Origin: Dendrobates tinctorius
Taxonomy: Eukaryota
NCBI RefSeq assembly: GCF_039654945.1
Contig: NW_027361704.1
Span: forward strand, 42,036,001 to 42,100,000
Reading direction: 5' to 3'
DNA: 64,000 nucleotides
Below the pieces are notes generated by a model, which was not told the DNA's origin, searched no databases, and worked only from the letters and a program-made list of their open reading frames with translations. This document shows, piece after piece, positions 37,106 to 56,300 of this stretch. Positions within the stretch are counted from its first letter, which is position 1; each line of letters opens with the position of its first letter. Made by a program: the position numbers and the translations under genes.

Positions 37106-38399
37106 TAAGACAGTGATAGGAATGTGATTGCAGCACAGGGTTAAAGAACCAGGCTCGGAACACCTGAGGAGCAGAGGATGGCGCAGGGCAAGAATCAGAC
37201 GTGCCCCTTGTTTCCTTCCCAAATTGTCTCCCAATGTACAATCTTACTCCCAGTAGAAGCATGACAACAGGTTTTAACCATTAAATACAATGTAGGGAAG
37301 TCACTCTACGGCAGCAATTGAGGTAGGCGCAAGCCAAAACCTACTTAGTCAAATATGAAAATTTATTTAACTTCATAAATCTTCAAATGAAACAAACAGT
37401 CTTTCACTGGCAACACAGTTTAACATAAAATAAAACAGTCTTTACAGATGTACGACTCACCAGTTAACCAGGGTCTCTATGACTAGTCTTTCTTAACTAC
37501 AACAGACGACAATAACAGGCAGTCTTAAACGGCCTTAGGCCTGTTTCACACATCCGTTTGTGTCCATCAGTCAAAATCCGCCGTTTTGCAAAAAAAAACG
37601 GATCCGCCATTTTTCTTGGCGGATCCGTTTTTTTCCCATTGAGTTGCATTATCAGCGGATCTTGACGGATGGCCATCCGTTGGATCCAATTTTTTGCGGA
37701 TCCGCCAAAATTTTGACGTCCGCCGACATGTCCAAACGGAGCATGCAACGTTTTTTCGGGCGGCCGGATGCGCAATTCTCACTGCGCAAGCCCAAAAGAC
37801 TTCACTCTGCCGCAAATTTAACCCTAAACTCTGTTCTGGCGGCTGAAACATTCTCTCTCTCTCTCTCTCTCTCGGCAGCGGTTCCTTTAAAATTCTTCCT
37901 TTGACGGAGCCGTTAAAATAACGGACCGGTGCCAAACGTCGTGGTCAGTACAGGAACGGATCCGTTATCCGCCATTTTAGTGGATTTTTACTGACCAAAA
38001 AAACTGATGCGAGAAAGTCTTAGTTACTCACCGGTTAACGGTATTTTTCGGAGCCCATGACAGCACCACCTGAGAGAGGGGATCCGCCCTTTAGGAACAG
38101 GAAACCTACAGATACAAAAGGGTGGCACCTCTCCCACACATCAGTTGGATTACAGAGCACAAGAGGACTTCCAAGGTTAATGCATGATTTATGTACAGTA
38201 TTCTTATTATTATTATAAATGTTTATCACCAGTGGGCATATACAAGAGGAAGACGTGCACACCCAAATTAAACTAAAGGGAGGGAATATACGGGTGCTGT
38301 CATGGACTCCGAAATATACCGTTAACTGGTGAGTAACTAAGACTTTATTCGGTCGTCCATGACAGCACCACCTGAGAGAATTACAGAGAGTAAAACTAT

Positions 38400-39830
38400 T
38401 TAGGGAGGGACGACAGCCTGCAGTACCCTTATACCAAAAGAGAGGTCTGTGGAAGCACCCAAGTCTAGCCTAAAATGACTATAAATGGTGCTTGGAGAGG
38501 ACCAAGTAGCCGCCTTACATATCTGGTCAATGGAGACTTCTGATCTTTTGGCCCCCGAGATCGCCATGGCCCTGGTGGAATGCGCCCTCAGCTTCCCAGG
38601 TGGCGACCTGCCCTTTGAGGTGTATGCTATTGAAATCGCCTCTCTAATCCATCTGGCTAGTGTATTTTTCGACGTTCTACAACCTTTCCTAGGGCCTTGA
38701 TGGGAGACAAATAGGGCATTATCTTTCTTCCAGGGATCGGTGACTGCCAGATATTCTATGAGGCATCTCCTAACATCCAGGGTGTGTAGTTTCTCTTCCT
38801 TCTCGTTAGCTGGGTTAGGGAGGAAGGATGGGAGGACTATCTCCTGTGTCCTATGAAAGCTAGAAACTACCTTAGGTAAGTACGCTGGATCAGGTCTGAG
38901 TATTACCCTATCCTCTTTGAACTGTAAATAAGGAGGACGCCTAGATAATGCCTGGATATCGCTTACTCTGCGAGCTGATGTTAGAGCTACCAGGAAGGCT
39001 ATTTTGAGGGACAGGTTTTTTATGGAAGCCAATGAGATAGGTTCGAATGGGGTTTCCGTCATAGCAGTGAGGACTAGGTTCAAGTCCCACGGCATGAATC
39101 TATCCTTCACTATTGGTCTGGCTCTACCTGCCGCCTTAATGAACCTGCTGACCCAGTAATTACCAGCGATGTTGCAGCTAAAAAGGGCCCCCAAGGCTGA
39201 TACTTGTACTTTAAGGGTACTGGTAGAAAGCCCCATGTCCAGACCTTTCTGTAGAAACTCTAATATCTGAATTATAGGTGCTGAATCCCCAGCGACTACT
39301 CCTGAGTTTTGAAGGAATTTTTTCCAAATTCTAACATAAATTTTCGTGGTAATGATTTTTCTACTTTTAAGTAGGGTGTTAATTAGGTCTGGGGAGAAGC
39401 CTTTCTCTTCTAGCAGTGACCGTTCAAACTCCACGCCGTCAGATGTAGGCCAGCCAACTGAGGATGGAACACTGGGCCCTGGGATAGGAGATCCGGGATG
39501 TCCGGAAGAACCAAAGGATCGGATACCGACATGGTCCTGAGGCATGAGAACCATGCCCTCCTGGGCCAAAATGGAGCGATAACTATAACCCTTGCTCTGT
39601 CTTTTCTGATTTTCTTTATCACCAGGGGTATTAGAGACAGAGGAGGGAAGGCGTAGGCTAGCCTGAAGTCCCACTTTATCAGAAAGGCATCTACCGCCAG
39701 AGGATTCTCTCTGGGATTTAAGGAGCAGAATTGTCTCAATTTTTTGTTCTCCTTGGTGGCGAAGAGATCTACCTCTGGATGTCCCCACTTTTGTACAATC
39801 AGGTTGAATATGGAGGTGTTTAAGGACCAT
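38400..39830 (-). CDS. DIRS tyrosine recombinase
   Basis: LVALTSARRVSDIQAL (catalytic R), LDVRRCL, RAHSTRA (HxxR), CKAATWSSPSTIYSHFRL. The expected terminal Tyr appears as F here versus HYRL in element B, so it may be inactive. Confidence 0.9.
   Translation of the reverse strand: MVLKHLHIQPDCTKVGTSRGRSLRHQGEQKIETILLLKSQRESSGGRCLSDKVGLQASLRLPSSVSNTPGDKENQKRQSKGYSYRSILAQEGMVLMPQDHVGIRSFGSSGHPGSPIPGPSVPSSVGWPTSDGVEFERSLLEEKGFSPDLINTLLKSRKIITTKIYVRIWKKFLQNSGVVAGDSAPIIQILEFLQKGLDMGLSTSTLKVQVSALGALFSCNIAGNYWVSRFIKAAGRARPIVKDRFMPWDLNLVLTAMTETPFEPISLASIKNLSLKIAFLVALTSARRVSDIQALSRRPPYLQFKEDRVILRPDPAYLPKVVSSFHRTQEIVLPSFLPNPANEKEEKLHTLDVRRCLIEYLAVTDPWKKDNALFVSHQGPRKGCRTSKNTLARWIREAISIAYTSKGRSPPGKLRAHSTRAMAISGAKRSEVSIDQICKAATWSSPSTIYSHFRLDLGASTDLSFGIRVLQAVVPP
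39410..39790 (-). pseudogene. DIRS N6-adenine methyltransferase-like domain overlapping the YR ORF
   Basis: DAFLIKWDFRLAYAFPP...VIVIAPFWPRRAWF, the typical DIRS1 MTase-like domain after RNase H. Confidence 0.8.
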
Positions 39831-39855
39831 TCTCCTTGCTTTAGCTGATTGCGGC

Positions 39856-40308
39856 TTAAAAAGTCTGCCGTGATGTTGTCCTCCCTTTTATATGTAGAGC
39901 TGTTAAAGATAGAAAATGCTGCTCTGCTAGTTGGAACAACCGCTCTGCTACAATCATCAGGGGTCTGGAATGGGTCCCGCCTTGGTGATTGATATACGCC
40001 ACGGTGACCTGATTGTCGGAGAACACTCGCACGTGATGGCCCTGTAGATACACAAGGAGCTTTTTAGCCGCCTGTTCTACTGCTGTCAATTCTTTTAGGT
40101 TAGACGACATTCCTAACTGATGATGTTCCCATTGGTCCTGGACTAGCATTTCACCCATATGAGCCCCCCAACCGGAAGGGCTAGCATCTGTGGTGACTAT
40201 GCGGGTTGTGTTATACTCCCAGGGTACCCCTTTAGATAAATTATCCTTGTCTAGCCACCACTCTAGGGACTCCCTTGTGTTACGGGACAAGGTTAGCTGG
40301 CCCTCCAA
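39856..40308 (-). pseudogene. DIRS RNase H
   Basis: TTDASPSGWGAH, SSNLKELTAV, VFSDNQVTVAYINHQGGT; separated from the RT by a stop. Confidence 0.88.
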
Positions 40309-40374
40309 GTAACCCCCAAGGATTTTTTGATGTAATAAAACCTCGCTCTGTAGTTTCCTTGCATGAAACTGGGC

Positions 40375-41223
40375 CTACTGGACTGCCGGGATACAGGCCG
40401 AGAGAGAGCCTAGAAGGGACATGGCTTTCCTGAGGGACATGGTGGGGTTATTGGAGGCGTTCAGGACCTGGTAGTGGAGGCGAACAAGCTTCTCCGGAGG
40501 CAGACGGCATTCCTGTTTCTCAGAATCTAGGATTAGGCCCAAGAATTGTTGGACTCTCATCGGTTGCAACCGAGATTTTTTGATGTTCAGCAACCATCCT
40601 AACCGCTCTAGGGCAAACATTGCCCTTTGTAGCTGTTCCAAACAATGGTTCGCCATTTTGCCTACAATAAGAAAATCGTCCAGGTAGGGGACCACCAGAA
40701 TGTCAGATTCACGTAGATGGGCCATGACTTCCGCTATCACTTTAGTAAATACTCGGGGGGCGACTGCCACACCAAAGGGAAGGGCCGCATATTGGAAATG
40801 TCGAACTGACCCATCTAACTGAACTGCCACTCTGAGAAAATGCTGATGAGCTGCATGGATGGGTATATGGTAGTAGGCGTCTTTTAAATCTAACACCACC
40901 ATAAAGCAGTTTTGGAACAGCAATTTTATTGTGGACTTAATTGTTTCCATTTTAAACGGACGTATGACCAGAAACTTGTTGAGGGCCTTAAGGTTTATTA
41001 TAGTCCTAAAGGAGCTGTCTGGCTTGCGGACCAGGAACAGAGGGGAGTAGAAACCCGTCCCCCATTCTCCCTCTGGAACCTCTGTTAGGACTTTCTTGCC
41101 GCACAGGTCATGAACCTCAGCCTCCAGGGCAGCTTGTTCTGAAGTAGAAGACCTGAGTGGGGTGATTTTAAATCGATCATGGGGAACCCTAGAGAATTCT
41201 AGTCGCAGTCCCACAGCTATCAC
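40375..41223 (-). pseudogene. DIRS reverse transcriptase
   Basis: FYSPLFLVRK, DLKDAYYHIPI, LPFG, YLDD. Confidence 0.92.
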
Positions 41224-41497
41224 CCCCAGTATCCAGATGCTATTAGAGATCAGCGACCAGGTTGGGTAGAAGGCAGCTAGTCTCCCTCCTACCGGGGCAA
41301 CTAGTCATTGGGGCGGGTTTTTCGTGTCACGAGCTGGACCTTCCTGGCGCCCCCCTCCTCCAAACATGAATCCTGTACCTTTCCTTCTTTTCTCATCCCA
41401 TCTGCCCTGATCTCTGGACGGCCTTCTACGGAAATATCCTTTCCTGGTAAAGGGACGTCTATAAGAAGGATTTGGCAGACTGGGAAATTTCTTTTTG

Positions 41498-42782
41498 TCA
41501 TCCCCAGCTTTTTCTAATAATTCGTCCAGGACAGGGCCGAAAAGATACTCCCCCCTCGCAAGGAATGGAACAGAGACGGGACCGGGCCTGAATATCTCCC
41601 GGCCAGCACTTTAACCAGAGCGCTCTTCGCGCTGCATTAGATAGACCCGCGGCTCTAGCCGCCATCCTTGCAGAGTCTGCTGAAGCATCAGCTAAAAACG
41701 CAGCGGCATTCTGGATGATCGGCAGATTTTTTCGAATGGATGCTCTTGAGGCTCCGTCTTTTAGCTCGGAATACAGTTGATCTAGCCAGACCATCATGGA
41801 TCTGGCTGTACTGGTGGCAGCTATCGCTGGTCTTAGTGCGCCTGCTGACATCTCCCATGTTCCTTTTAGAAAAGAATCTGCTTTTTTATCTAGCGGATCT
41901 TTCAAGGAGGCCATATCGTCAAAGGGTATGGAGGATTTTTTGGACGCTTTGGCTACTGCTGCGTCTAGTTTCGGGGCCTTATCCCATCTGCTTACTACTG
42001 GGTCATCAAAGGGGTATCTCCGCTTGAAAGCTGGTGGCATGGTGCCCCTTTTTTCAGGTCTCTTCCATTCTCTGTCTATTAGGCTCTGGACTTTATCATT
42101 TAATGGAAAAGCCCTGCGTTTTCTGGGGTCTAGACCCCCGAACATTATGTCCTGTGCTGAGAGTTCCCGTTTTGTGTCCGCTACCCCCATGGTGGACCTT
42201 ATTGCTTTCACTAGTCTGTCCATTTGATCTAAGGGGAAGCAGAATCGGCTAGAGTCTTCATCCGAGGAAGATGACGAGGAGGCCGAGGAATTATCACCTT
42301 TCCTAGGGGTGACTCAGGCCTCCGAGCCTGAAACACTAGCCTCTCTTCTAGAAGGTTCCCCTTGAGATAAGACTTTCATCTCCGACCTGATTATCTCCCT
42401 CAGGCTTGAAGTGAAGTCAGGTGTCTCTTCCGCTACCTGCGTAAACGGGGGAGAGTATAAGGGCCTGACAATCTACCCCTGGACTCCCTGTCTCTATCAA
42501 CCCCTACCGTCTGTCGTATGCATGGCTGACATAACTTTTTAGGGTGGCCATCTGGTAGGGGGCAACTACAGAGGGCACATTCCCTGTGCTTCTGTTTTCC
42601 CGTAGCTTTCTTCCCCTGCGAAAAAACATAAGGGAACACTGCATCAGGGTACATTCACGGAGATCTCTTACCCATGCAGTTGAAGCAGGTACCAGATCAC
42701 GGAGGGAGGCAGGGGGATCCTTTAGTCTGGAGGAACTTCCGCGGCTTTGGTCGCTTGTTCGTCTGTTTCTTTTGCTGGCCAC
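41498..42782 (-). pseudogene. DIRS gag with an N-terminal CxxC...CxxC finger, apparently split by two short GT-AG introns
   Basis: Exon 42508-42615 encodes GKKATG...CALC...CQPCIRQT. Splicing out 42616-42671 and 42437-42507 puts it in frame with ORF 41498-42223, with one TGA at ~42315. Confidence 0.8.
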
Positions 42783-43929
42783 TCGTATGTGGTTTTGTTG
42801 TGGCCCGTTTCTGCGGGCGCTCCTGCGCCTCGTCCTGCTGGTCTATGGGGGCTTCCGTCGTATCCATTGCTGGGCCCTTCGGAAGCACCCCAGAAGCGTC
42901 CCCCCTGCCTTATATGGCCTCTTGGTGTCCGGATCAGCAGGGATCTGGCCATGGCACCACCCACCCGGGATTCTCCCGTGACCTCCCCCCCATGCTCCGG
43001 CCCCCCCACCTTACCCAGGCCGCCGCCCGCGACCCCCGGACAGGCGTGCACCCACGGCGCGCATCGGAAGCCGGCCGGCACCCGACTTCCTGTTTCGGCG
43101 TTCCCGGCTCCGCCCCTTCCGCCGCATCACTTCCGCCGCTCACCAGAGCTTTGCGGGAGCGCGCGCGAAGGAGCCGGCGCGGCGCCCCCTGCCCGGAATG
43201 CCTCCCAGCCGCGCGCGCGCCGCCATGACCGCCAACCAGGCGCCAACGTTGACCGGGAGGACCGGACCCGGGGGAGCGCACCAGGAGGGCCCGGGGCATA
43301 CCCGGTGCTGGCATTCTGGAGGCGGTGTCCACCGGACCCTCTGCTCCACCTGCTCCGTCCACTGCCGTTGTGACCTACCCAGCCCCACCGTGGCGCTTCC
43401 AGGGACCCCGCACTGACCGAGGTAGGAGACCCCCCCCGCTACCTGGGTCGGTCAGCCGGCCTGGGAATCCATGACAACTCCATGACGGACGATCTGTAGG
43501 GAGTCTTGTCCTCTAAGAACAGGAAACCAACTGATGCGTGGGAGAGGTGCCACCCTTTTGTATCTGTAGGTTTCCTGTTCCTAAAGGGCGGATCCCCTGT
43601 CTCAGGTGGTGCTGTCATGGACGACCGAATAAAGAGGCCTTAAATAATCACTCTAATCCTGGAAGTGGAGATATGAGAATAGGCAGTCCCGCCCAGTTCT
43701 TGTGGTGATTCCTAAAACCCTAACCCAATTTCCAGGCACATTAAAATAAAAAAAACAAATAAAAAAAACTCAGCACTAATGGTACTGGGGCCTGTTCTTC
43801 AGAGCTCACACCACCTCAGTGACATCTCCTAACCAAGACCTGTCCAGCTGCCACCTTACAATGGTTTTTCATTCAGTCCCACTGCCACAGGTCTATAACA
43901 TCTAGCTCTTCACCATGCAGTCTGCATTT

Positions 43930-50046: not shown

Positions 50047-51826
50047 TACTTACATTTCTTATTTTCTGGAAGGAAGAGTAGCTCTGCAGCACAAACAGCT
50101 GATCTAACAACTGCTGTCATGGGTTCCGGAAAAACCGGCTACCGGTAAGTAACCATTGTGGTTTTCCCTTCACCCATGACAGCACCACCTGAGAGATTTT
50201 TGGAGATTCGAAACACCTTAGGGAGGGACCACCGCTTGCAGCACCCTTCTACCAAAGGTTGTCAGCAGAGGAGGATAGATTTAATCTATAGTGCTTAAAG
50301 AAGGTTGAAGGTGAGGCCCAGGTAGCGGCCTTACAAATCTGTTCGATCGATACCTTTGCTTTTTCGGCCCAGGAGGTCGCCACAGCTCTGGTGGAATGAG
50401 CCTTGATGCCGTCAGGAATCGGGATACCACTAGCTGTGTAGGCTACACTAATGACCTCCCTAATCCATCTAGCAATAGTCCCTTTTGAAACCCCATCGCC
50501 TTTCCTGGCACCCTGAAAAGCTACGAATAGGGACTGGGACCTCCTCCACTGGCTAGTCATAGATATGTATTCTACGAGAGCTCTCTTAACATCCAGATTA
50601 TGGAACTTTTCCTCCCCCAGATTTTTTGGGTTCTCGCAGAAAGATGGAAGGACAATTTCCTAGCCCCGATGGAAATCTGATGCTACCTTGGGCAGATAAG
50701 CGGGGTCTGTTCTTAACACTACCCTATCCTGAAAGACTTGCGTATAAGGTGGATTTACTGAGAGAGCCTGTAAATCGCTTATCCTGCGGGCTGACGTGAG
50801 GGCCACTAACAGGATTGTTTTTAGGGTCAGAAACTTTAGGGGTAGCTGATGTAATGGCTCATACGGATCTTTTGTAAGGGCCTCTAGCACTAGGTTTAAA
50901 TCCCAGGGGGCTATCCGGGGTATTGGGATAGGCCTAGCTCTATGGCAGGATTTAATAAACCTGGCTACCCATCTATTTGATGCCAATTTTCAGTTGTAGT
51001 GCAGACACCTGAACTTTAAGTGTGTTCACTGCTAACCCCATCTGCAACCCCGATTGTAAGAACTCCAGGATGGCATTAATCGGGGGATCTTTCCCTAACG
51101 CCCTACCTAAGAACTGCAGGAACTTATTCCATGTTCTGCCGTAGATGTTAGTCGTCACTGGTTTCCTACTCTTTAGCAGGGTGCCCACCAACCCGGGGGA
51201 GAACCCTCTATTCGTTAAAAGCGACCTTTCAAATTCCACGCCGTCAGATGGAATCCTTTGACCTGAGCGTGGAATATTGGACCTTGAGCTAGTAGGTCCG
51301 GGATTTCTGGTAGAACCCATGGATCGGAGAGGGACAACCTTCGTAGCAGAGCAAACCAGGGCCTTTTTGGCCAAAATGGAGCTATTAGAATCACCCTGGC
51401 CTGATCGTTTCTGATTTTTCTGACAACTGTTGGGATCAGAGCCACTGGGGGGGAATGCATAAGCTAGCCTGAAGTTCCACTGGATGTGCAATGAGTCCAC
51501 TGCCCATGGATTTTCTCTCGGGTTTAGAGAGCAGAACCTTTCTGTTTGCCTGTTGTGTTTGTTGGCAAAGAGGTCTATCACCGGTTAACCCCAAAGCTGA
51601 GTTATTTTTTGAAAAATGGACCGGTTTAGCGCCCATTCCCCCTGCTTCAGGGTATTGCGACTCAAGAAGTCTGCCTCTATGTTTTCTGCCCCTTTTACTG
51701 TATATGTAAGACTGTCAAGGAGTGTAGGTGTTCTTCTGCTCTGCTCAGAATGTCTGTCGCCGCTTCCATTAAGGAGTGTGATCTTGTCCCTCCTTGGTGG
51801 TTGATGTATGCCACTACTACCTTGTT

Positions 51827-52176
51827 AAGATGAGGATGAATGAACTCATGGAGATCAACATCCAACACTGCGGAGACACCATCACGTGTTTCTCAACGCA
51901 GTGATTCTAGAGCACTGCCCCATCCCTTATGGGAAATATGCAAAACATGCACAGTCTTTTACTAGGCATTGCTCCTACCAGCCAGTTTCCTACTCCACAC
52001 TGATGAGGGGCAATACCCCGAAACAGCTGTCTGTGGATGGATACCATGTTTTGGCATAGGTGGTTTCCTTCATAGGAGACTGCCCTTCCCGTGGTTGTTC
52101 CTTCCCGGGGAAAGACCTGGCTGGTCATTGCTTGCGTTGAGAAACATGTGATGGTGTCTCCGCGGCTTCTGTTTTG
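51827..52176 (+). mobile_element. 350-bp hammerhead-ribozyme-bearing retroelement (retrozyme-like) with a 15-bp TSD
   Basis: TSD CACTACTACCTTGTT at 51812-51826 and 52177-52191. Removing the insert restores DIRS RNase H SDNKVVVAYINHQGGTRS. Confidence 0.9.
51994..52037 (+). ncRNA. Type I hammerhead ribozyme, predicted cleavage after GUC at 52031
   Basis: Stem I UCCACA/UGUGGA, core CUGAUGA, stem II GGGG-CAAUA-CCCC, GAAA, minimal stem III with palindromic ACAGCUGU, then GUC. Confidence 0.9.
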
Positions 52177-52455
52177 CACTACTACCTTGTTGTCTGACAT
52201 GATGCGTACATTTCGACCCTGGAGTAGCGGAATGAAATGATTTAGGGCCTTGCTCACTGCCCACAGTTCTCTCAGGTTGGAGGATGCTTCCCCTTCTTGA
52301 CGCGTCCAGGAACCCTGACCTATGATGCCCCTTAGGTGTGCCAAACGGAAGAGCCCTGAACTGAAAGTGCCTTAGCGTGCCTTGAATATAAAGTGCTATC
52401 CTCAAGTATTTCTGGTAATCTGGGTGGATAGGGATGTGATAATACGCATCCTTTA

Positions 52456-53392
52456 GGCTAAGTGCACACGTACCGGAACTCTTGCGGAAATTACCGCGAG
52501 AATTCCGGAATTCCAGTCCGCGGGAAATTCGCATTTTAAATTCCCGCGATTTTCCCGCGGAAAAACTAGCATTTTGCAAGCGTAATTAGCTTGCAAAATG
52601 CTAGCGTTTTCCAAGCGATCTGTGGCATCGCTTGGAGAACTGATTGACAGGTTGGTCACACTCGTCAAACAATGTTTGACGAGTGTGACCAACTTTTTAC
52701 TACTGAGGCTGCCTATGCGGCATCAGTAGTAAAAGATAGTATGTAAAAAAAAAAAAACGGTGTTATTCTCACCCTCCAACGTCCCGCGCATCCGTTCCCA
52801 GTAATCCTTTGCGAAAATGCCCGCGATGACGTCAGTTCTCGCGGGATCGCGACGTCTCGCGGTTATTCGCGATGACGTCGCGCGAATGACCGCGAGACTT
52901 TGCGATCCCGCGAGAAGGGACGTCATCGCGAGCATTTTCGCAAAGGACTACTGGGAACAAGAGTGTGAAGAGAAGCGGGAAGGCTGTGCGGGACGTCGGA
53001 GGGTGAGAATAACAATATTTTTATTTTAAATTCAATTTTTTACAGGGATATGGTACCCAAAGCCCGGAGGACAGTCTTCTCTCCTCCGGACCATGGGTAC
53101 CATCCGCAATTGTTCTGCTTACTTTCCGCATGGTGTACACAGCCACATGTGGGAAATAAGCGGAACAATGCATTCCTATGGGTGCGGGATGGCCGCGATT
53201 CCGCAAATCAATGAGCATGCTGCGGTTTTTACCGCGAAGCGATTCCGCCGCGGTAAAAACCGCAGCATTAGCACAGCATTGCAGAATCCAATAGGAATGC
53301 ATGGGATGCTTATTTTTCACGTTTTCGTGGCAAAATCGCGCGGTTAAAACCGCTGCGGAAACGCGAAAAAAACGCCACGTGTGAACTCAGCC
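52456..53392. mobile_element. Harbinger-type MITE inserted in the element B RT
   Basis: TTA|GGCTAAGTGCACACGT...ACGTGTGAACTCAGCC|TTA; removal restores V-D-L-K-D-A. Confidence 0.88.
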
Positions 53393-56300
53393 TTAAATCG
53401 ACCATGGCCATGAAGCAATCTTGGTGTAGCAGCTTCACCGCCGTAGTTACTGATTCCATCTTGAAGGTCGAGTTCCTTATCCATAGATTGAGCCGTTTGA
53501 GATTTATGATTGTCCTGAAAGTTTGATCGGGTTTTTTTTATCAGAAAAAGGGGTGAATAAAACCCCTTCCCTTCCTGTAGGCGTGGTACCTCGGAGAGTA
53601 CCCGCTTGTCTATCAGGCTCAGGATCTCTGTTTCTAAGGCCACCTGCTCTTCGGTCACCTTCCTGATGGGTGTGATGACGACCACGGATTTTGGCTGACG
53701 GATGAAGGGAATTTTCAGGCCTTCTGTCAGGATGGTTAGGATCCAGGCGTTGGAGGAGATCATCTCCCAGGTTTGGAAAAAGAGTGCCAATCTCCCCCCC
53801 ACTGGAATACTGGCGTCACTGTGGCGACTTTTTTGAGGTGGAGGTACCTCCACCAAACATAAATCCCGATTCTTTTTTTCTTTTATCCTCCCATCTTCTC
53901 CTGTCAGCGGGAGGGCGCCCCCTATTGAATCTCCCCCTCCGAAAGGGCTGTCTCCTCTGATCCATAGGGAATCTGGGGAAGCCTTTTTTCTTATCGCCTG
54001 CTTTCTCCAGTATATCGTCCAAGTTCTTGCCGAACAAGAATCGACCGTCGCAGGGGAGAGAGCATAATTTGGCCTTGGACTGGAGGTCACCCGGACAGCC
54101 CTTAAGCCATAACGCGCGTCTAGCAGCATTTGATAGTGATGCTGCCCTGGCTGTCATCCGCATAGAGTCCGCCGAGGTATCGGCCAAAAAAGCTGCTGCC
54201 CCGTGCAAGAGATACATCTCCGATAAGATTTTCTCTCTTGGGACCCTTGAAGCCAGCTTTTCTTCTAACTGCTGCAGCCAGATCATGAGGGAGCATGCCG
54301 TACAAGTACCCGCTATTGCCGGCTTTAGTCCTCCTGCTGTCGCTTCCCATGCGTGCCTCAAATATGAGTCCGCCTTTTTGTCTAGTGGGTCTCTAAGAAC
54401 CCCTGCGTCTTCCAGGGGCAGGGCCGACCTTTTGGAGGATCTGGACACCGCTGCATCTATTTTGGGGATTTTGTCCCATATCTCTGCATCCTTATGCTTT
54501 TGAAAGTGGATGGAAGGGCCCCCGATTTTTCGGGCTTTTTCCACTCCTTCTCAATAAGTGCCTGGATCTTCTCGTTTACCGGAAAGGTCCGTTTTTTCCT
54601 CTCCTGAAGCCCCCCAAACATAACATCCTCTAGGGTTTTAGCCGCCTTTTCTTCCTGTAGGCCCATTGTAGCTCTAATGGCCTTTAGGAGGGCGTCTGTG
54701 TCTTCTACAGGGAAACATGGTTTACCCCCCATGTCGCTGTCTGAGGAGTCTGAGGAGGATGATTTTTCCGCCTGAGATGACATTGACGCGGAATCCGAGG
54801 GGGAACTAGGGGGATCCTTCCTGTTTTTTTTCTCTTTTTTCAATAGGGACTTAATTGAGCCTTCCATTTCTGACCTTAGGGCAGATATCAGATTGGCTGC
54901 GAAACTAGGCGCTTCCTCCGCCATAGTCCGCTGAATGCACGCAGCACAGAGATCTTTTTGCCAATCTCTTGCTAGGGGAGATTTACATATAGCACAATCC
55001 CTATTGTTCTTCTTGCTTCCCGCTTTCCTAGGCCTTTCCTACAGGGTGAAGCATACAACAGAAGCCCTTTAACATATGCTAACATTCACGAAGATCACTC
55101 ACCTCCCGAAATCAAGGGTACCGGACTCGGAGGCTGCGTCGGGGCACGTGACCTGCGTTCTTTGGATCTTGCTGAATCCCCCGACCTGCGGCTGGGGCGA
55201 CTGCTGCTGGAATGGCTTCCATGCTTTCTGCCAGAGGGCTGAGAGGGAGGCAGGGACGCTGAACGTTCCTGCTCTGACTCCATGTTGCACCACCGTCTGC
55301 TGCCGCCTTCTCTTTAAATACCATGCCTCCGCTCAGGTGAGCGTCTCTCCCCTCCCCCCTGCGACCGCCGGCCGCCTTTTCAAGAAGCCGGCCGGCGTCG
55401 CACCCGGCGCCATTAAACCGTCGCCCTTCTCTGACGTCAGCCGGCGCACCCAGCATGCAATGCGCCGCTGACGTCAGCGGCCGGAAGAAGCCAGCGTCTC
55501 TCCCCTGCTATGGGGATCGAGATGCGGTGTGCGCGAGGGGAGGGCGGCGCGGTGGGGGATCCCACCGACGCCCGCACGAACCCGGAACCCCAGAGGGCCC
55601 GGGGACTGCACATCCAGCACCCGACGGCCGGCGCTGCAGGTGAGACACCTGTTCTTCCTGCGCCGGGACGGGGCTGGGTCCATTTCCTTCGCCCATGACA
55701 GGCACCGCCAACAGTGGGGTTCCTTCCAGGACAGGAACCCAACTGAAGCGGGGGAGAGGTGCCGCCCCTTATATCTCAGTAGGTTCCTGTCCTGGCGGGG
55801 CGGATCCCTCTCTCAGGTGGTGCTGTCATGGGTGAAGGGAAAATAAAGATATTTACGAGCATGGATCGAGATGGAGATTTTTCAACAGTACTCCGTTTTG
55901 TCTATTTTTGTACCTTAACCCCATTTATTTTGGCTGTAATACTAATCAGCCCACATACCGGAGTGACATCATTTCTACAAAAACTATATTTTCCCTCTTT
56001 CTACTGAATATTAAAATATTAATGCATTTTTTACAAGATTTTCAATGCTGATCCTATCAGTTTCACCATCTGTTTATAGCCCTAATCCAGACAATATCAT
56101 CTGGGTCAAAACTATGAAATGATGTAATTTGCAGCATCCAAACTTTCAGCTGACATCAGAAAGAGGGATGATTTCCTGTCAAGATCCCATTCACTTTCTG
56201 AAATCCATTCATTACATCCAGTCCTAGAAGCGTCTACACCAAAACACAATCATTCTTCAATTTACAATTCCCCTCTATCCAGCAGAACGGCCCTGCTTAC

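What the first reader, a model, noticed from the sequence alone, without database searches (positions are those of the whole stretch)
55039..55102. Homologous intron in the second DIRS family, with a conserved 15-nt motif just after the donor
Seen: element B has a 64-nt GTGAGT...CCCTGTAG segment immediately upstream of its finger exon (ERPRKAG...CAIC...CAAC), the same position as intron 1 of element A. Both carry GATCTYCGTGAATGT at intron positions +7 to +21 (A: gtaaga-GATCTCCGTGAATGT; B: gtgagt-GATCTTCGTGAATGT; 14/15 identical), although the flanking gag sequence is very divergent. Inference: this is a constrained cis-element, for example for splicing control, export or packaging, which would select unspliced RNA for replication and explain why the intron persists. 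Caveat: in this copy of B the upstream ATG ORF meets the donor one base out of phase, so an indel has to be assumed.
Basis: partly seen in the sequence, partly recalled or inferred. Interest (0 to 1): 0.75.

Follow-up and report, generated by a model that had tools for sequence, protein, structure and literature searches.

The report
Conserved donor-like block in DIRS intron

Summary
Element B has the 64-nt GTGAGT...TGTAG segment (55102..55039), and the motif GATCTYCGTGAATGT sits at +7..+21 in both A and B.

The interpretation needs one correction. The donor that keeps gag in frame is not GTGAGT. It is a weak donor 19 nt upstream, CCG|GTACCC (G at 55121). With that donor the ATG ORF (55283..55122, 54 codons) joins the finger exon in phase, and no indel is needed.

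The same layout recurs in 12 of 14 anuran DIRS gag starts compared. It consists of a weak in-frame donor D1, then a strong consensus donor look-alike D2 (G|GTRAGWG) 19-27 nt further in.

The 15-mer follows D2 in 7 of the 14: A, B, and five families from Ranitomeya and Dendrobates. There its mean pairwise identity is 0.86, against 0.36 for the next 30 intron bases and 0.57 for the zinc-finger codons.

The block is therefore under selection. It has no conserved fold, no long-range partner and no Rfam match.

Best reading (about 45%): a U1-binding decoy or auxiliary site that tunes splicing of the gag intron. No splice junction was seen, and the contigs laid on this region are unspliced.

Earlier notes of this scan reported the gag intron and tandem donors on other DNA of this genome.

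The parts
55310..55320 (-). Element B: TATA-like box (TATTTAAAGAG) about 30 nt before the ATG. Two TGACGTCA palindromes lie upstream at 55469-55476 and 55432-55439.
   Evidence: Read from the sequence. Coverage in run X17 (type on record only as a guess at RNA) drops to about zero upstream of about 55317.
55122..55283 (-). Element B gag exon 1: ATG plus 54 codons, Ser/Arg/Pro-rich, ending ...PPSP.
   Evidence: Open frame from ATG 55283 reaches the donor D1 in phase 0. Exon 1 in the relatives has a similar composition and a Pro-rich end.
55116..55124 (-). D1: the weak, in-frame coding donor CCG|GTACCC, with the intron's first G at 55121.
   Evidence: Phase 0 relative to both the ATG and exon 2. 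CGGTA is invariant in the 7-sequence alignment. Only 4 in-register pairs with the U1 5' end, about -4.3 kcal/mol.
55103..55121 (-). 19-nt spacer between D1 and D2. It is intronic under the D1 model.
   Evidence: Its length varies among families (19, 21, 23, 22, 27, 22, 21, 20, 20, 26), not in steps of three, and the sequence is not conserved.
55097..55103 (-).
   Evidence: G at -1 and GTRAG are invariant in 10 dual-donor elements. There are 8-11 in-register pairs with the U1 5' end, mean -10.7 kcal/mol. It is out of phase with gag in B.
55082..55096 (-). The 15-nt motif GATCTTCGTGAATGT (family pattern GAKCYNCGWGAAWGT).
55039..55081 (-). Rest of the intron, with a pyrimidine-rich tract and the acceptor TGTAG.
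   Evidence: Not conserved in sequence: identity 0.36 for the 30 nt after the motif. Copies in the genome differ here by substitutions and 1-nt insertions (tables 3 and 4).
54460..55038 (-). Element B gag exon 2 (CxxC...CxxC finger, then the start of the LAP2alpha-like domain), up to a frame break in this copy.
   Evidence: Translation. Pfam LAP2alpha on the next ORF. 158 relatives found by phmmer.
42616..42692 (-). Element A: the homologous intron, 77 nt from D1 (CTG|GTACCT, G at 42692). D2 is GTAAGA at 42671-42666 and the motif is at 42665-42651.
   Evidence: In this copy exon 1 is out of frame with either donor (175 nt from the ATG).
50112..55856 (-). [quoted passage not shown] It is degenerate (frame breaks, inserted repeats).
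38014..43634 (-). Element A as a whole: a DIRS-type retrotransposon (gag, RT, RNase H, tyrosine recombinase; ITRs of 97 nt at 97% complementarity; ICR).

Best explanation
Both elements are DIRS retrotransposons whose gag gene is split by a short U2-type intron just before the zinc-finger exon. The donor that yields Gag is a weak site, D1 (NCG|GTAYYN; in B the intron is 55121..55039, 83 nt). About 20 nt inside the intron sits a selected 22-nt block, made of a near-perfect U1-type donor look-alike D2 (G|GTRAGWG) followed directly by GATCYNCGTGAAWGT. The most likely action is as follows. U1 snRNP, perhaps with a factor bound to the 15-mer, occupies D2. D2 is too close to the branch site and acceptor (56-67 nt) to splice well and is out of frame for Gag. 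Occupancy of D2 would therefore hold back or tune use of D1. Much of the RNA would then stay unspliced and serve as the intron-containing template for copying, while a controlled share is spliced into gag mRNA. Shown here: the intron and D1 are conserved and in frame, the block is under purifying selection, and D2 is far more complementary to U1 than D1. Inferred: U1 binding, a decoy or tuning effect, and any factor on the 15-mer.
For: (1) D1 is in phase 0 with an ATG ORF of 21-74 codons and with exon 2 in 11 of 12 elements. This includes B, which no gene predictor selected. Through D2 the phases scatter, and 7 of 10 have no ATG ORF.
(2) The D1-to-D2 spacing is 19-27 nt and does not vary in threes.
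(3) D1-to-acceptor is 77-91 nt in 12 of 14 elements. That matches the 82-84 nt of the Engystomops lineage, where GTAAGT itself is the coding donor. D2-to-acceptor is only 56-67 nt in 8 of 10.
(4) Duplex energy with the U1 5' end averages -4.3 kcal/mol for D1 and -10.7 for D2. The -1 G of D2 is invariant.
(5) The block's mean pairwise identity is 0.87 over 22 nt and 0.86 over the motif. The comparisons are 0.36 for the next 30 nt, 0.57 for the finger codons and 0.75 for the best 15-nt coding window. The families compared have terminal gag branches of 0.26-0.81 substitutions per site.
(6) No consensus local structure and no shared long-range partner were found, which fits a linear binding site.
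(7) Run X17 is covered only downstream of the TATA box, as a transcript would be. Its contigs cross the acceptor, D2 and D1 unspliced, and no intron joint was listed in any of the 4 runs.
(8) There is a precedent for a decoy 5' splice site that keeps retroviral RNA unspliced, the RSV NRS (PMC3082916).
Against: There is no direct RNA evidence for any splice at D1 or D2. Only assembled contigs were available, they drop rare forms, and the type of the runs is uncertain.
The in-frame D1 in the 10 fetched loci partly reflects how gene models are built.
By the usual proximity rule, a strong donor nearer the acceptor should win. D2 could therefore be the site mainly used.
Two elements have D2 far from the acceptor (108 and 342 nt), so the steric argument does not hold for them.
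The 15-mer is missing in 3 lineages that keep D2, so D2 can exist without it.
No factor is known for the 15-mer.
The branch-site distances are heuristic, and no candidate was found in 5 introns.
Confidence: 0.45

Rival explanations
1. D2 is a real, mainly used donor, and the 15-mer is its intronic splicing enhancer. D2 splicing would give a second RNA species. That could be exon 1 joined out of frame to the near acceptor as a non-productive or regulatory product, or exon 1 joined to a distant acceptor for pol or recombinase expression, as another first-reader note in this genome suggests.
For: D2 has full U1 complementarity and an invariant -1 G. The position +7..+21 after a donor is where intronic enhancers of 5' splice sites act (general knowledge). 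Note s1-381455 proposes tandem donors with two routes.
Against: D2-to-near-acceptor products are out of frame, or lack an ATG ORF, in 7 of 10 elements, and in B they stop after three codons. The recombinase region of A continues the RNase H frame without a separate start or an evident conserved acceptor. No such joint appeared in the laid contigs.
Confidence: 0.2
2. The block is a packaging, dimerisation or reverse-transcription signal placed in the intron, so that only unspliced RNA is copied. This would parallel retroviral packaging signals that lie downstream of the major donor.
For: The block lies only in unspliced RNA, it is strongly conserved, and all genomic copies seen retain the intron. 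How DIRS reverse transcription is primed is unknown (PMC7192593).
Against: There is no conserved hairpin (consensus energy -0.8 kcal/mol), the fold z-scores are not significant, and no shared complementary partner exists within A or B. Half of the block is a textbook U1 site, which a packaging role does not explain. The 15-mer is absent from many DIRS families that still carry the intron.
Confidence: 0.15
3. The block works at the DNA level. It could be a transcription-factor site downstream of the internal promoter, or a GATC-containing target of the element's own Dam-like methyltransferase domain.
For: It lies about 220-280 bp downstream of the TATA box in A, B and L001. Six of 7 motifs start with GATC. 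DIRS elements encode a Dam/MT-like domain (PMC9210276).
Against: The -1 G plus GTRAG pattern is what RNA recognition by U1 predicts. The distance to the promoter varies. The Dendrobates copy has GAGC in place of GATC.
Confidence: 0.08
4. GTGAGT is the gag donor, and this copy of B carries a 1-nt indel in exon 1.
For: GTGAGT is the best-looking donor, and B is a degenerate copy.
Against: D1 already gives an in-frame product in B. None of the best-supported indels among thousands of contigs from family copies lies between 55103 and 55283 (table 4; 42 further indels were not shown). Relatives show every phase through D2.
Confidence: 0.03

Closest known systems
Negative regulator of splicing (NRS) of Rous sarcoma virus
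   Same: A retroelement needs both spliced and unspliced RNA. A decoy 5' splice site inside the intron, downstream of the authentic donor, binds U1 and holds back splicing (PMC3082916).
   Different: The NRS is about 230 nt long, lies a few hundred nt from the donor, and has a defined SR-protein-binding 5' part plus U11 binding. Here the block is 22 nt, lies about 20 nt from a very weak donor in an 80-nt intron, and has no known partner proteins. Inhibition was not shown here.
Pseudo-5' splice sites that block the third intron of the Drosophila P element in somatic cells (from general knowledge, not checked in a paper here)
   Same: A transposon controls its own protein output by drawing U1 to donor look-alikes a few tens of nt from the accurate donor.
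   Different: In the P element the pseudo-sites lie in the upstream exon and act with PSI and hrp48. That element is a DNA transposon, and the control is tissue-specific.
Retroelements that carry spliceosomal introns (Penelope-like elements; also copia and Ogre LTR elements, from general knowledge)
   Same: An intron is retained in genomic copies, so the replicated RNA is the unspliced one. Penelope-like elements are called exceptional for this (PMC4209133).
   Different: The element class differs (tyrosine-recombinase DIRS), the intron splits gag before its zinc finger, and it has tandem donors with a conserved block. The DIRS surveys that could be read do not mention introns (PMC3266345, PMC9210276).
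Retroviral major splice donor with the packaging signal just downstream
   Same: A donor-type sequence and an adjacent conserved element sit near the 5' end, in RNA that must partly escape splicing.
   Different: Retroviral signals are structured stem-loops. No conserved structure was found here.

Membership tests
DIRS1-like retrotransposon (order DIRS) | Reverse transcriptase and RNase H of the DIRS/Gypsy type | tested here: met
   Element A: RVT_1 E=1.5e-18 and RT_RNaseH E=2.1e-07. B matches A's RT by tblastn, in pieces.
DIRS1-like retrotransposon (order DIRS) | Tyrosine recombinase instead of a DDE integrase | tested here: inconclusive
   Phage_integrase E=0.0016 at 18.7 bits, below Pfam's cut-off of 27.1. 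The 476-aa ORF is conserved between A and B at 50-60% identity.
DIRS1-like retrotransposon (order DIRS) | Inverted terminal repeats plus an internal complementary region | tested here: met
   A: 97-nt arms at 97% complementarity, plus ICR repeats at 38293-38379. B: 48-nt arms at 88%, plus an ICR at 50112-50136.
DIRS1-like retrotransposon (order DIRS) | ORF1 (gag-like) with a LAP2alpha-type domain | tested here: met
   PF11560 with E=1.5e-14 for A and 1.2e-13 for B. The link between this domain and DIRS gag is described in PMC4495291.
U2-type spliceosomal GT-AG intron | GT...AG ends, a pyrimidine tract, and exons that join in frame | tested here: met
   With D1: phase 0 on both sides in 11 of 12 elements and a length of 77-91 nt in 12 of 14.
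U2-type spliceosomal GT-AG intron | Spliced RNA observed | tested here: inconclusive
   No joint over the intron was listed in 4 runs, and the contigs that cross it are unspliced. Only contigs were available and the run types are uncertain. Support is otherwise indirect: RefSeq gene models of relatives.
U12-type (minor) intron | Rigid donor RTATCCTT and branch site TCCTTAAC close to the acceptor | tested here: not met
   D1 varies among GTACCC, GTACCT, GTATTT, GTACTA and GTATAT. Candidate branch sites are CTTAT-like, which is the U2 type. The consensus used comes from general knowledge.
Decoy 5' splice site element (NRS-like) | A U1-complementary pseudo-donor inside the intron, downstream of the authentic donor | tested here: met
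   D2 lies 19-27 nt inside the intron and makes 8-11 in-register pairs with the U1 5' end.
Decoy 5' splice site element (NRS-like) | The pseudo-donor is not used productively and lowers splicing at the real donor | not testable with these tools
   Only inference is available: D2 is out of frame, is 56-67 nt from the acceptor, and the contigs are unspliced.
Decoy 5' splice site element (NRS-like) | An adjacent part that binds SR proteins | not tested
   The 15-mer could play this part, but no binding data or motif library was available.

The most novel reading that the evidence does not exclude
Poison-frog DIRS elements carry a miniature splicing switch not described for tyrosine-recombinase retrotransposons. 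A weak coding donor is paired with a conserved U1 decoy and a 15-nt factor site 20 nt downstream. The switch would decide whether a transcript becomes gag mRNA or stays the intron-containing template for copying. Because unspliced RNA cannot encode Gag, the mRNA and genome roles would be split between two RNA forms.
Probability: 0.3. Interest if true: 0.7.

Novelty: new variant of a known kind. Interest (0 to 1): 0.5.

Why it matters
How DIRS elements express their proteins and choose the RNA that is copied is largely unknown. The surveys that could be read treat ORF1 as one uninterrupted reading frame.

A gag gene that can be made only from spliced RNA, next to a short block conserved more tightly than the zinc-finger codons, gives a concrete and mutable handle on that question. 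It also adds a third kind of retroelement, after retroviruses and Penelope-like elements, in which splicing control is built into the element.

There are practical consequences for annotation. The true exon boundary is 19 nt upstream of the obvious donor. Gene predictors also turn these elements into 'uncharacterized protein' or 'LAP2-like' genes, and into chimeric models with host exons.

Tried and rejected
- **Word-based protein search** with B's exon 2 piece gave no hits. The exhaustive search was then used.
- **Word search with P0001**, residues 1-140, returned only P0001 and P0002, so no transcript-derived ORFs were found.
- **Metagenome scan** for the 21-nt D2+motif pattern gave 4 contigs. 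All are unrelated bacterial sequence and chance matches.
- **Viral-contig scan** with a full gag found no relative.
- **Local RNA structure:** single-sequence folds have z-scores from -0.98 to +1.22. The consensus fold of 7 sequences is -0.8 kcal/mol with 4 pairs.
- **Long-range pairing** of the motif within A or B found only non-homologous, weak sites.
- **Rfam** gave only a sub-threshold miRNA hit on the other strand.
- **Coding readings of the motif.** In the frame GAT CTN CGT GAA WGT, most differences would be silent or conservative. However, the exon 1 frame reaches the motif in that frame only in A and L015, and stops intervene in B, L001, L002 and L003. The antisense frames hit a stop in L001. 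This reading was rejected (own reading).
- **An alternative acceptor** (AAAG|C) that would put D2 in frame in A and B fails as a general rule, because D2 phases differ among families.
- **U12-type intron:** rejected (see the membership test).
- **Tandem donors routing to the recombinase:** A's recombinase region continues the RNase H frame, and no conserved acceptor was seen. This was not pursued.
- **Resemblances to snRNAs.** Eight-nt resemblances of the motif to parts of U1 and U6 snRNA were recalled from memory. They could not be tested, and the variable sixth base breaks them, so they carry no weight.
- **Bacterial-type promoter and terminator scan:** nothing found, and it is not relevant here.
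- **Gag tree**: mostly unresolved. For that tree only, the translations of A's exon 2 and exon 3 were joined inside a script, with X at the one stop.
Full report
**What is there**

The finding lies on the minus strand. The window holds two DIRS-type retrotransposons.
- Element A spans about 38014-43634. It has ITR arms of 97 nt at 97% complementarity, ICR repeats, RVT_1, RT_RNaseH, a weak Phage_integrase hit and a LAP2alpha-type gag.
- Element B spans about 50112-55856. It has ITRs, an ICR and a LAP2alpha-type gag. Its pol is broken by frame breaks and inserted repeats.
- A and B are about 64% identical in the pol and gag cores, and blastn cannot align them in the 5' gag region.

**Check of the observation**

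- B has a 64-nt GTGAGT...CCCTGTAG segment at 55102..55039, directly before an exon that reads ERPRKAG...CAIC...CAAC.
- The motif is at 55096..55082 in B and at 42665..42651 in A, in both cases at +7..+21 after GTRAGN. Fourteen of 15 bases match.
- These are the only matches in the window at up to 2 mismatches, against 0.22 expected.
- ATG 55283 to 55103 is 181 nt, so the ORF is one base out of phase with the finger exon through that donor.

**The coding donor is elsewhere**

An exhaustive protein search with B's finger exon found 158 relatives. Many carry about 55-68 extra N-terminal residues. I fetched the DNA for 12 of them. They are RefSeq or GenBank models from the following species:
- Ranitomeya imitator: L001, L002, L006, L015.
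- R. variabilis: L004, L005.
- Dendrobates tinctorius: L003.
- Bufo bufo: L007.
- Hyla sarda: L008.
- Dendropsophus ebraccatus: L009.
- Engystomops pustulosus: L010, L016 and L017.

In every dual-donor case the model's donor is a weak site, NCG|GTAYYN (D1), inside the conserved CCGGTAC string. The GTRAGT site (D2) lies 19-27 nt further in.

B was not chosen by any gene predictor, and it behaves the same way. Exon 1 (55283..55122) is exactly 54 codons up to CCG|GTACCC, the intron 55121..55039 is 83 nt, and exon 2 starts in phase 0. No indel has to be assumed.

Across 12 elements with D1:
- The D1-phased frame is open, with an ATG 21-74 codons upstream, in 11. A is the exception, because its exon 1 is out of frame with either donor.
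- Through D2 the phases are 1,1,2,1,0,1,0,2,2,2. In 7 of 10 the D2-phased frame has no ATG ORF, and in B it is closed three codons before D2.
- The spacer between the donors varies in length, not in threes, and is not conserved.
- None of the best-supported indels among thousands of contigs from B-family copies lies in exon 1 (table 4). That list was truncated.

**Two donors of very different strength**

- D1 makes 4 in-register pairs with the U1 5' end, about -4.3 kcal/mol.
- D2 makes 8-11 pairs, mean -10.7 kcal/mol, and its -1 G is invariant.
- D1-to-acceptor is 77-91 nt in 12 of 14 elements. D2-to-acceptor is 56-67 nt in 8 of 10.
- In the Engystomops lineage GTAAGT itself is the in-frame donor. 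There it lies 82-84 nt from the acceptor, only 6 nt after a CCRGT remnant.

Whichever donor codes is therefore about 80-90 nt from the acceptor. Heuristic branch-site candidates place D2 only 27-47 nt from the branch A in the dual-donor elements, against 48-69 nt for D1. That estimate is weak, because several introns gave no candidate.

**The block is under selection**

D2 is present in 10 dual-donor elements and is recognisably decayed in two single copies (L006, L007).

The 15-mer follows D2 in 7 of 14 elements: A, B, L001, L002, L004, L015, and a more divergent form in L003. The pattern is GAKCYNCGWGAAWGT. All seven come from poison-frog genomes. Two other Ranitomeya families and the four non-dendrobatid species sampled lack it, so it is not general to DIRS. 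The outgroup sample is small.

| Region compared (7 motif-bearing elements) | Mean pairwise identity |
|---|---|
| 15-nt motif | 0.86 |
| 22-nt block (D2 plus motif) | 0.87 |
| Next 30 intron bases | 0.36 |
| 84-nt CxxC finger core | 0.57 |
| Third codon positions of the finger core | 0.39 |
| Best 15-nt coding window | 0.75 |

The gag tree shows long terminal branches for these families, 0.26-0.81 substitutions per site. It is otherwise mostly unresolved. The motif-bearing rows need 2 changes on the tree, a value reached in 3 of 500 label shuffles. In the 7-way alignment the only invariant islands are CGGTA (D1) and GGT.AG.GA.C..CG.GAA.GT.

In the read-laying table, the base next to D2 (55104) is covered by 37 contigs in the DNA run, against 1-7 contigs for the listed intron positions nearby. 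That fits a block shared by many copies and families.

**What the block is not**

- No consensus hairpin and no significant single-sequence fold.
- No shared long-range partner within A or B.
- No Rfam family.
- No consistent coding frame on either strand.
- Not a U12-type intron.
- The exact 21-mer also occurs by chance in four bacterial metagenome contigs.

**RNA evidence**

Only assembled contigs were available.

Run X17 is on record only as a guess at RNA. It covers B from the gag region up to about 55317 and then falls to about zero until the ITR. A transcript starting after the TATA box at 55320-55313 would look like this. Its contigs cross the acceptor and D2 (54890-55112) and D2 and D1 (55083-55245) without a splice.

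No joint over the intron was listed in any of the four runs, including the DNA run. This fits inefficient splicing and the absence of intron-less genomic copies. It does not show that splicing never happens, and it gives no support for use of either donor.

**Mechanism**

The best-supported reading is a splicing-control arrangement. D1 is a weak, in-frame donor. D2 is a strongly U1-complementary look-alike about 20 nt inside the intron, too close to the 3' end to splice well and useless for Gag. The adjacent linear 15-mer may bind a helper factor. U1 held at D2 would compete with or modulate D1, leaving a large pool of unspliced, intron-containing RNA as the template that is copied. Spliced RNA would supply Gag.

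The closest precedents are the decoy 5' splice site of the RSV negative regulator of splicing (PMC3082916) and the pseudo-donors of the P element (general knowledge). I put this reading at about 45%.

The rivals are:
- D2 as the mainly used alternative donor, with the motif as its enhancer (20%).
- A DNA-level site (8%).

**Novelty**

The DIRS surveys I could read do not mention introns or splicing (PMC3266345, PMC9210276). Goodwin and Poulter 2001 is not held, so a prior mention cannot be excluded. Penelope-like elements are described as exceptional for carrying spliceosomal introns (PMC4209133).

Within this scan, the gag intron and tandem donors were already noted on other pieces of the same genome (s1-376925, s1-366821, s1-381455).
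- The phase proof for D1.
- The comparison of D1 and D2 by U1 complementarity and by distance to the acceptor.
- The quantified conservation of the block.
- Its restriction to poison-frog families.

**Limits and rules kept**

- The joined exon 1 plus exon 2 protein of B was not used in any search.
- For the local tree only, A's exon 2 and exon 3 translations were joined with X at the stop.

Noticed in passing
window 55310-55476 (minus strand): Internal promoter features of element B: TATTTAAAGAG about 30 nt before the ATG, and two perfect TGACGTCA (CRE-like) palindromes at 55469-55476 and 55432-55439. Coverage in run X17 starts just downstream of the TATA box.
   Followed up: partly
window 38023-38034 (minus strand), 3' end of element A: A second strong donor look-alike, CCG|GTGAGTAAC, sits in the terminal repeat/ICR-mirrored segment. 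Loose ends of contigs at B's end show ACCGGTAAGTAACC.
   Followed up: partly
window 40705-40719 (minus strand), RT gene of element A: CATCTACGTGAATCT, in the codons for HLRES just before the YLDD box, matches the L001 form of the intron motif at 13 of 15 bases and in the same sense. It is probably coincidence and was not examined in other families.
   Followed up: no
proteins P0002, P0010, P0012 (Ranitomeya imitator models): These are chimeric gene models in which host exons (for example a RING-type E3 ligase) are spliced onto the DIRS gag exon 2 acceptor. Many DIRS gag copies in Xenopus, Bufo and Ranitomeya are named 'lamina-associated polypeptide 2 alpha/zeta-like' or 'uncharacterized protein'.
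   Followed up: no
L010:2540-2560, L016:2538-2560 (Engystomops pustulosus): In this lineage GTAAGT itself is the in-frame gag donor, only 6 nt after a CCRGT remnant of D1. L016 has a possible degenerate motif after it (GATTTTTGTGCAGG, 10 of 14 bases). This may be the ancestral or a collapsed form of the tandem arrangement.
   Followed up: partly
window 52748-53027 and 52794-52958: Nested inverted repeats (78-nt arms at 91% complementarity, inside 51-nt arms at 82%) within element B's pol region. They look like a small hairpin-forming insertion, separate from the retrozyme-like insertion at 51827-52176 noted earlier.
   Followed up: no
window 55076-55471 (plus strand): A 131-codon ATG ORF antisense to B's exon 1 and promoter starts inside the intron and runs across the motif. 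The equivalent frame has a stop in L001, so it is probably spurious in this GC-rich stretch.
   Followed up: partly
window 42437-42507 (minus strand) and L015:2885-2959: Element A and its Ranitomeya relative L015 have a second short intron right after the finger exon (CAGACG|GTRRGG...AG|GTAGC). B and L001 lack it.
   Followed up: partly
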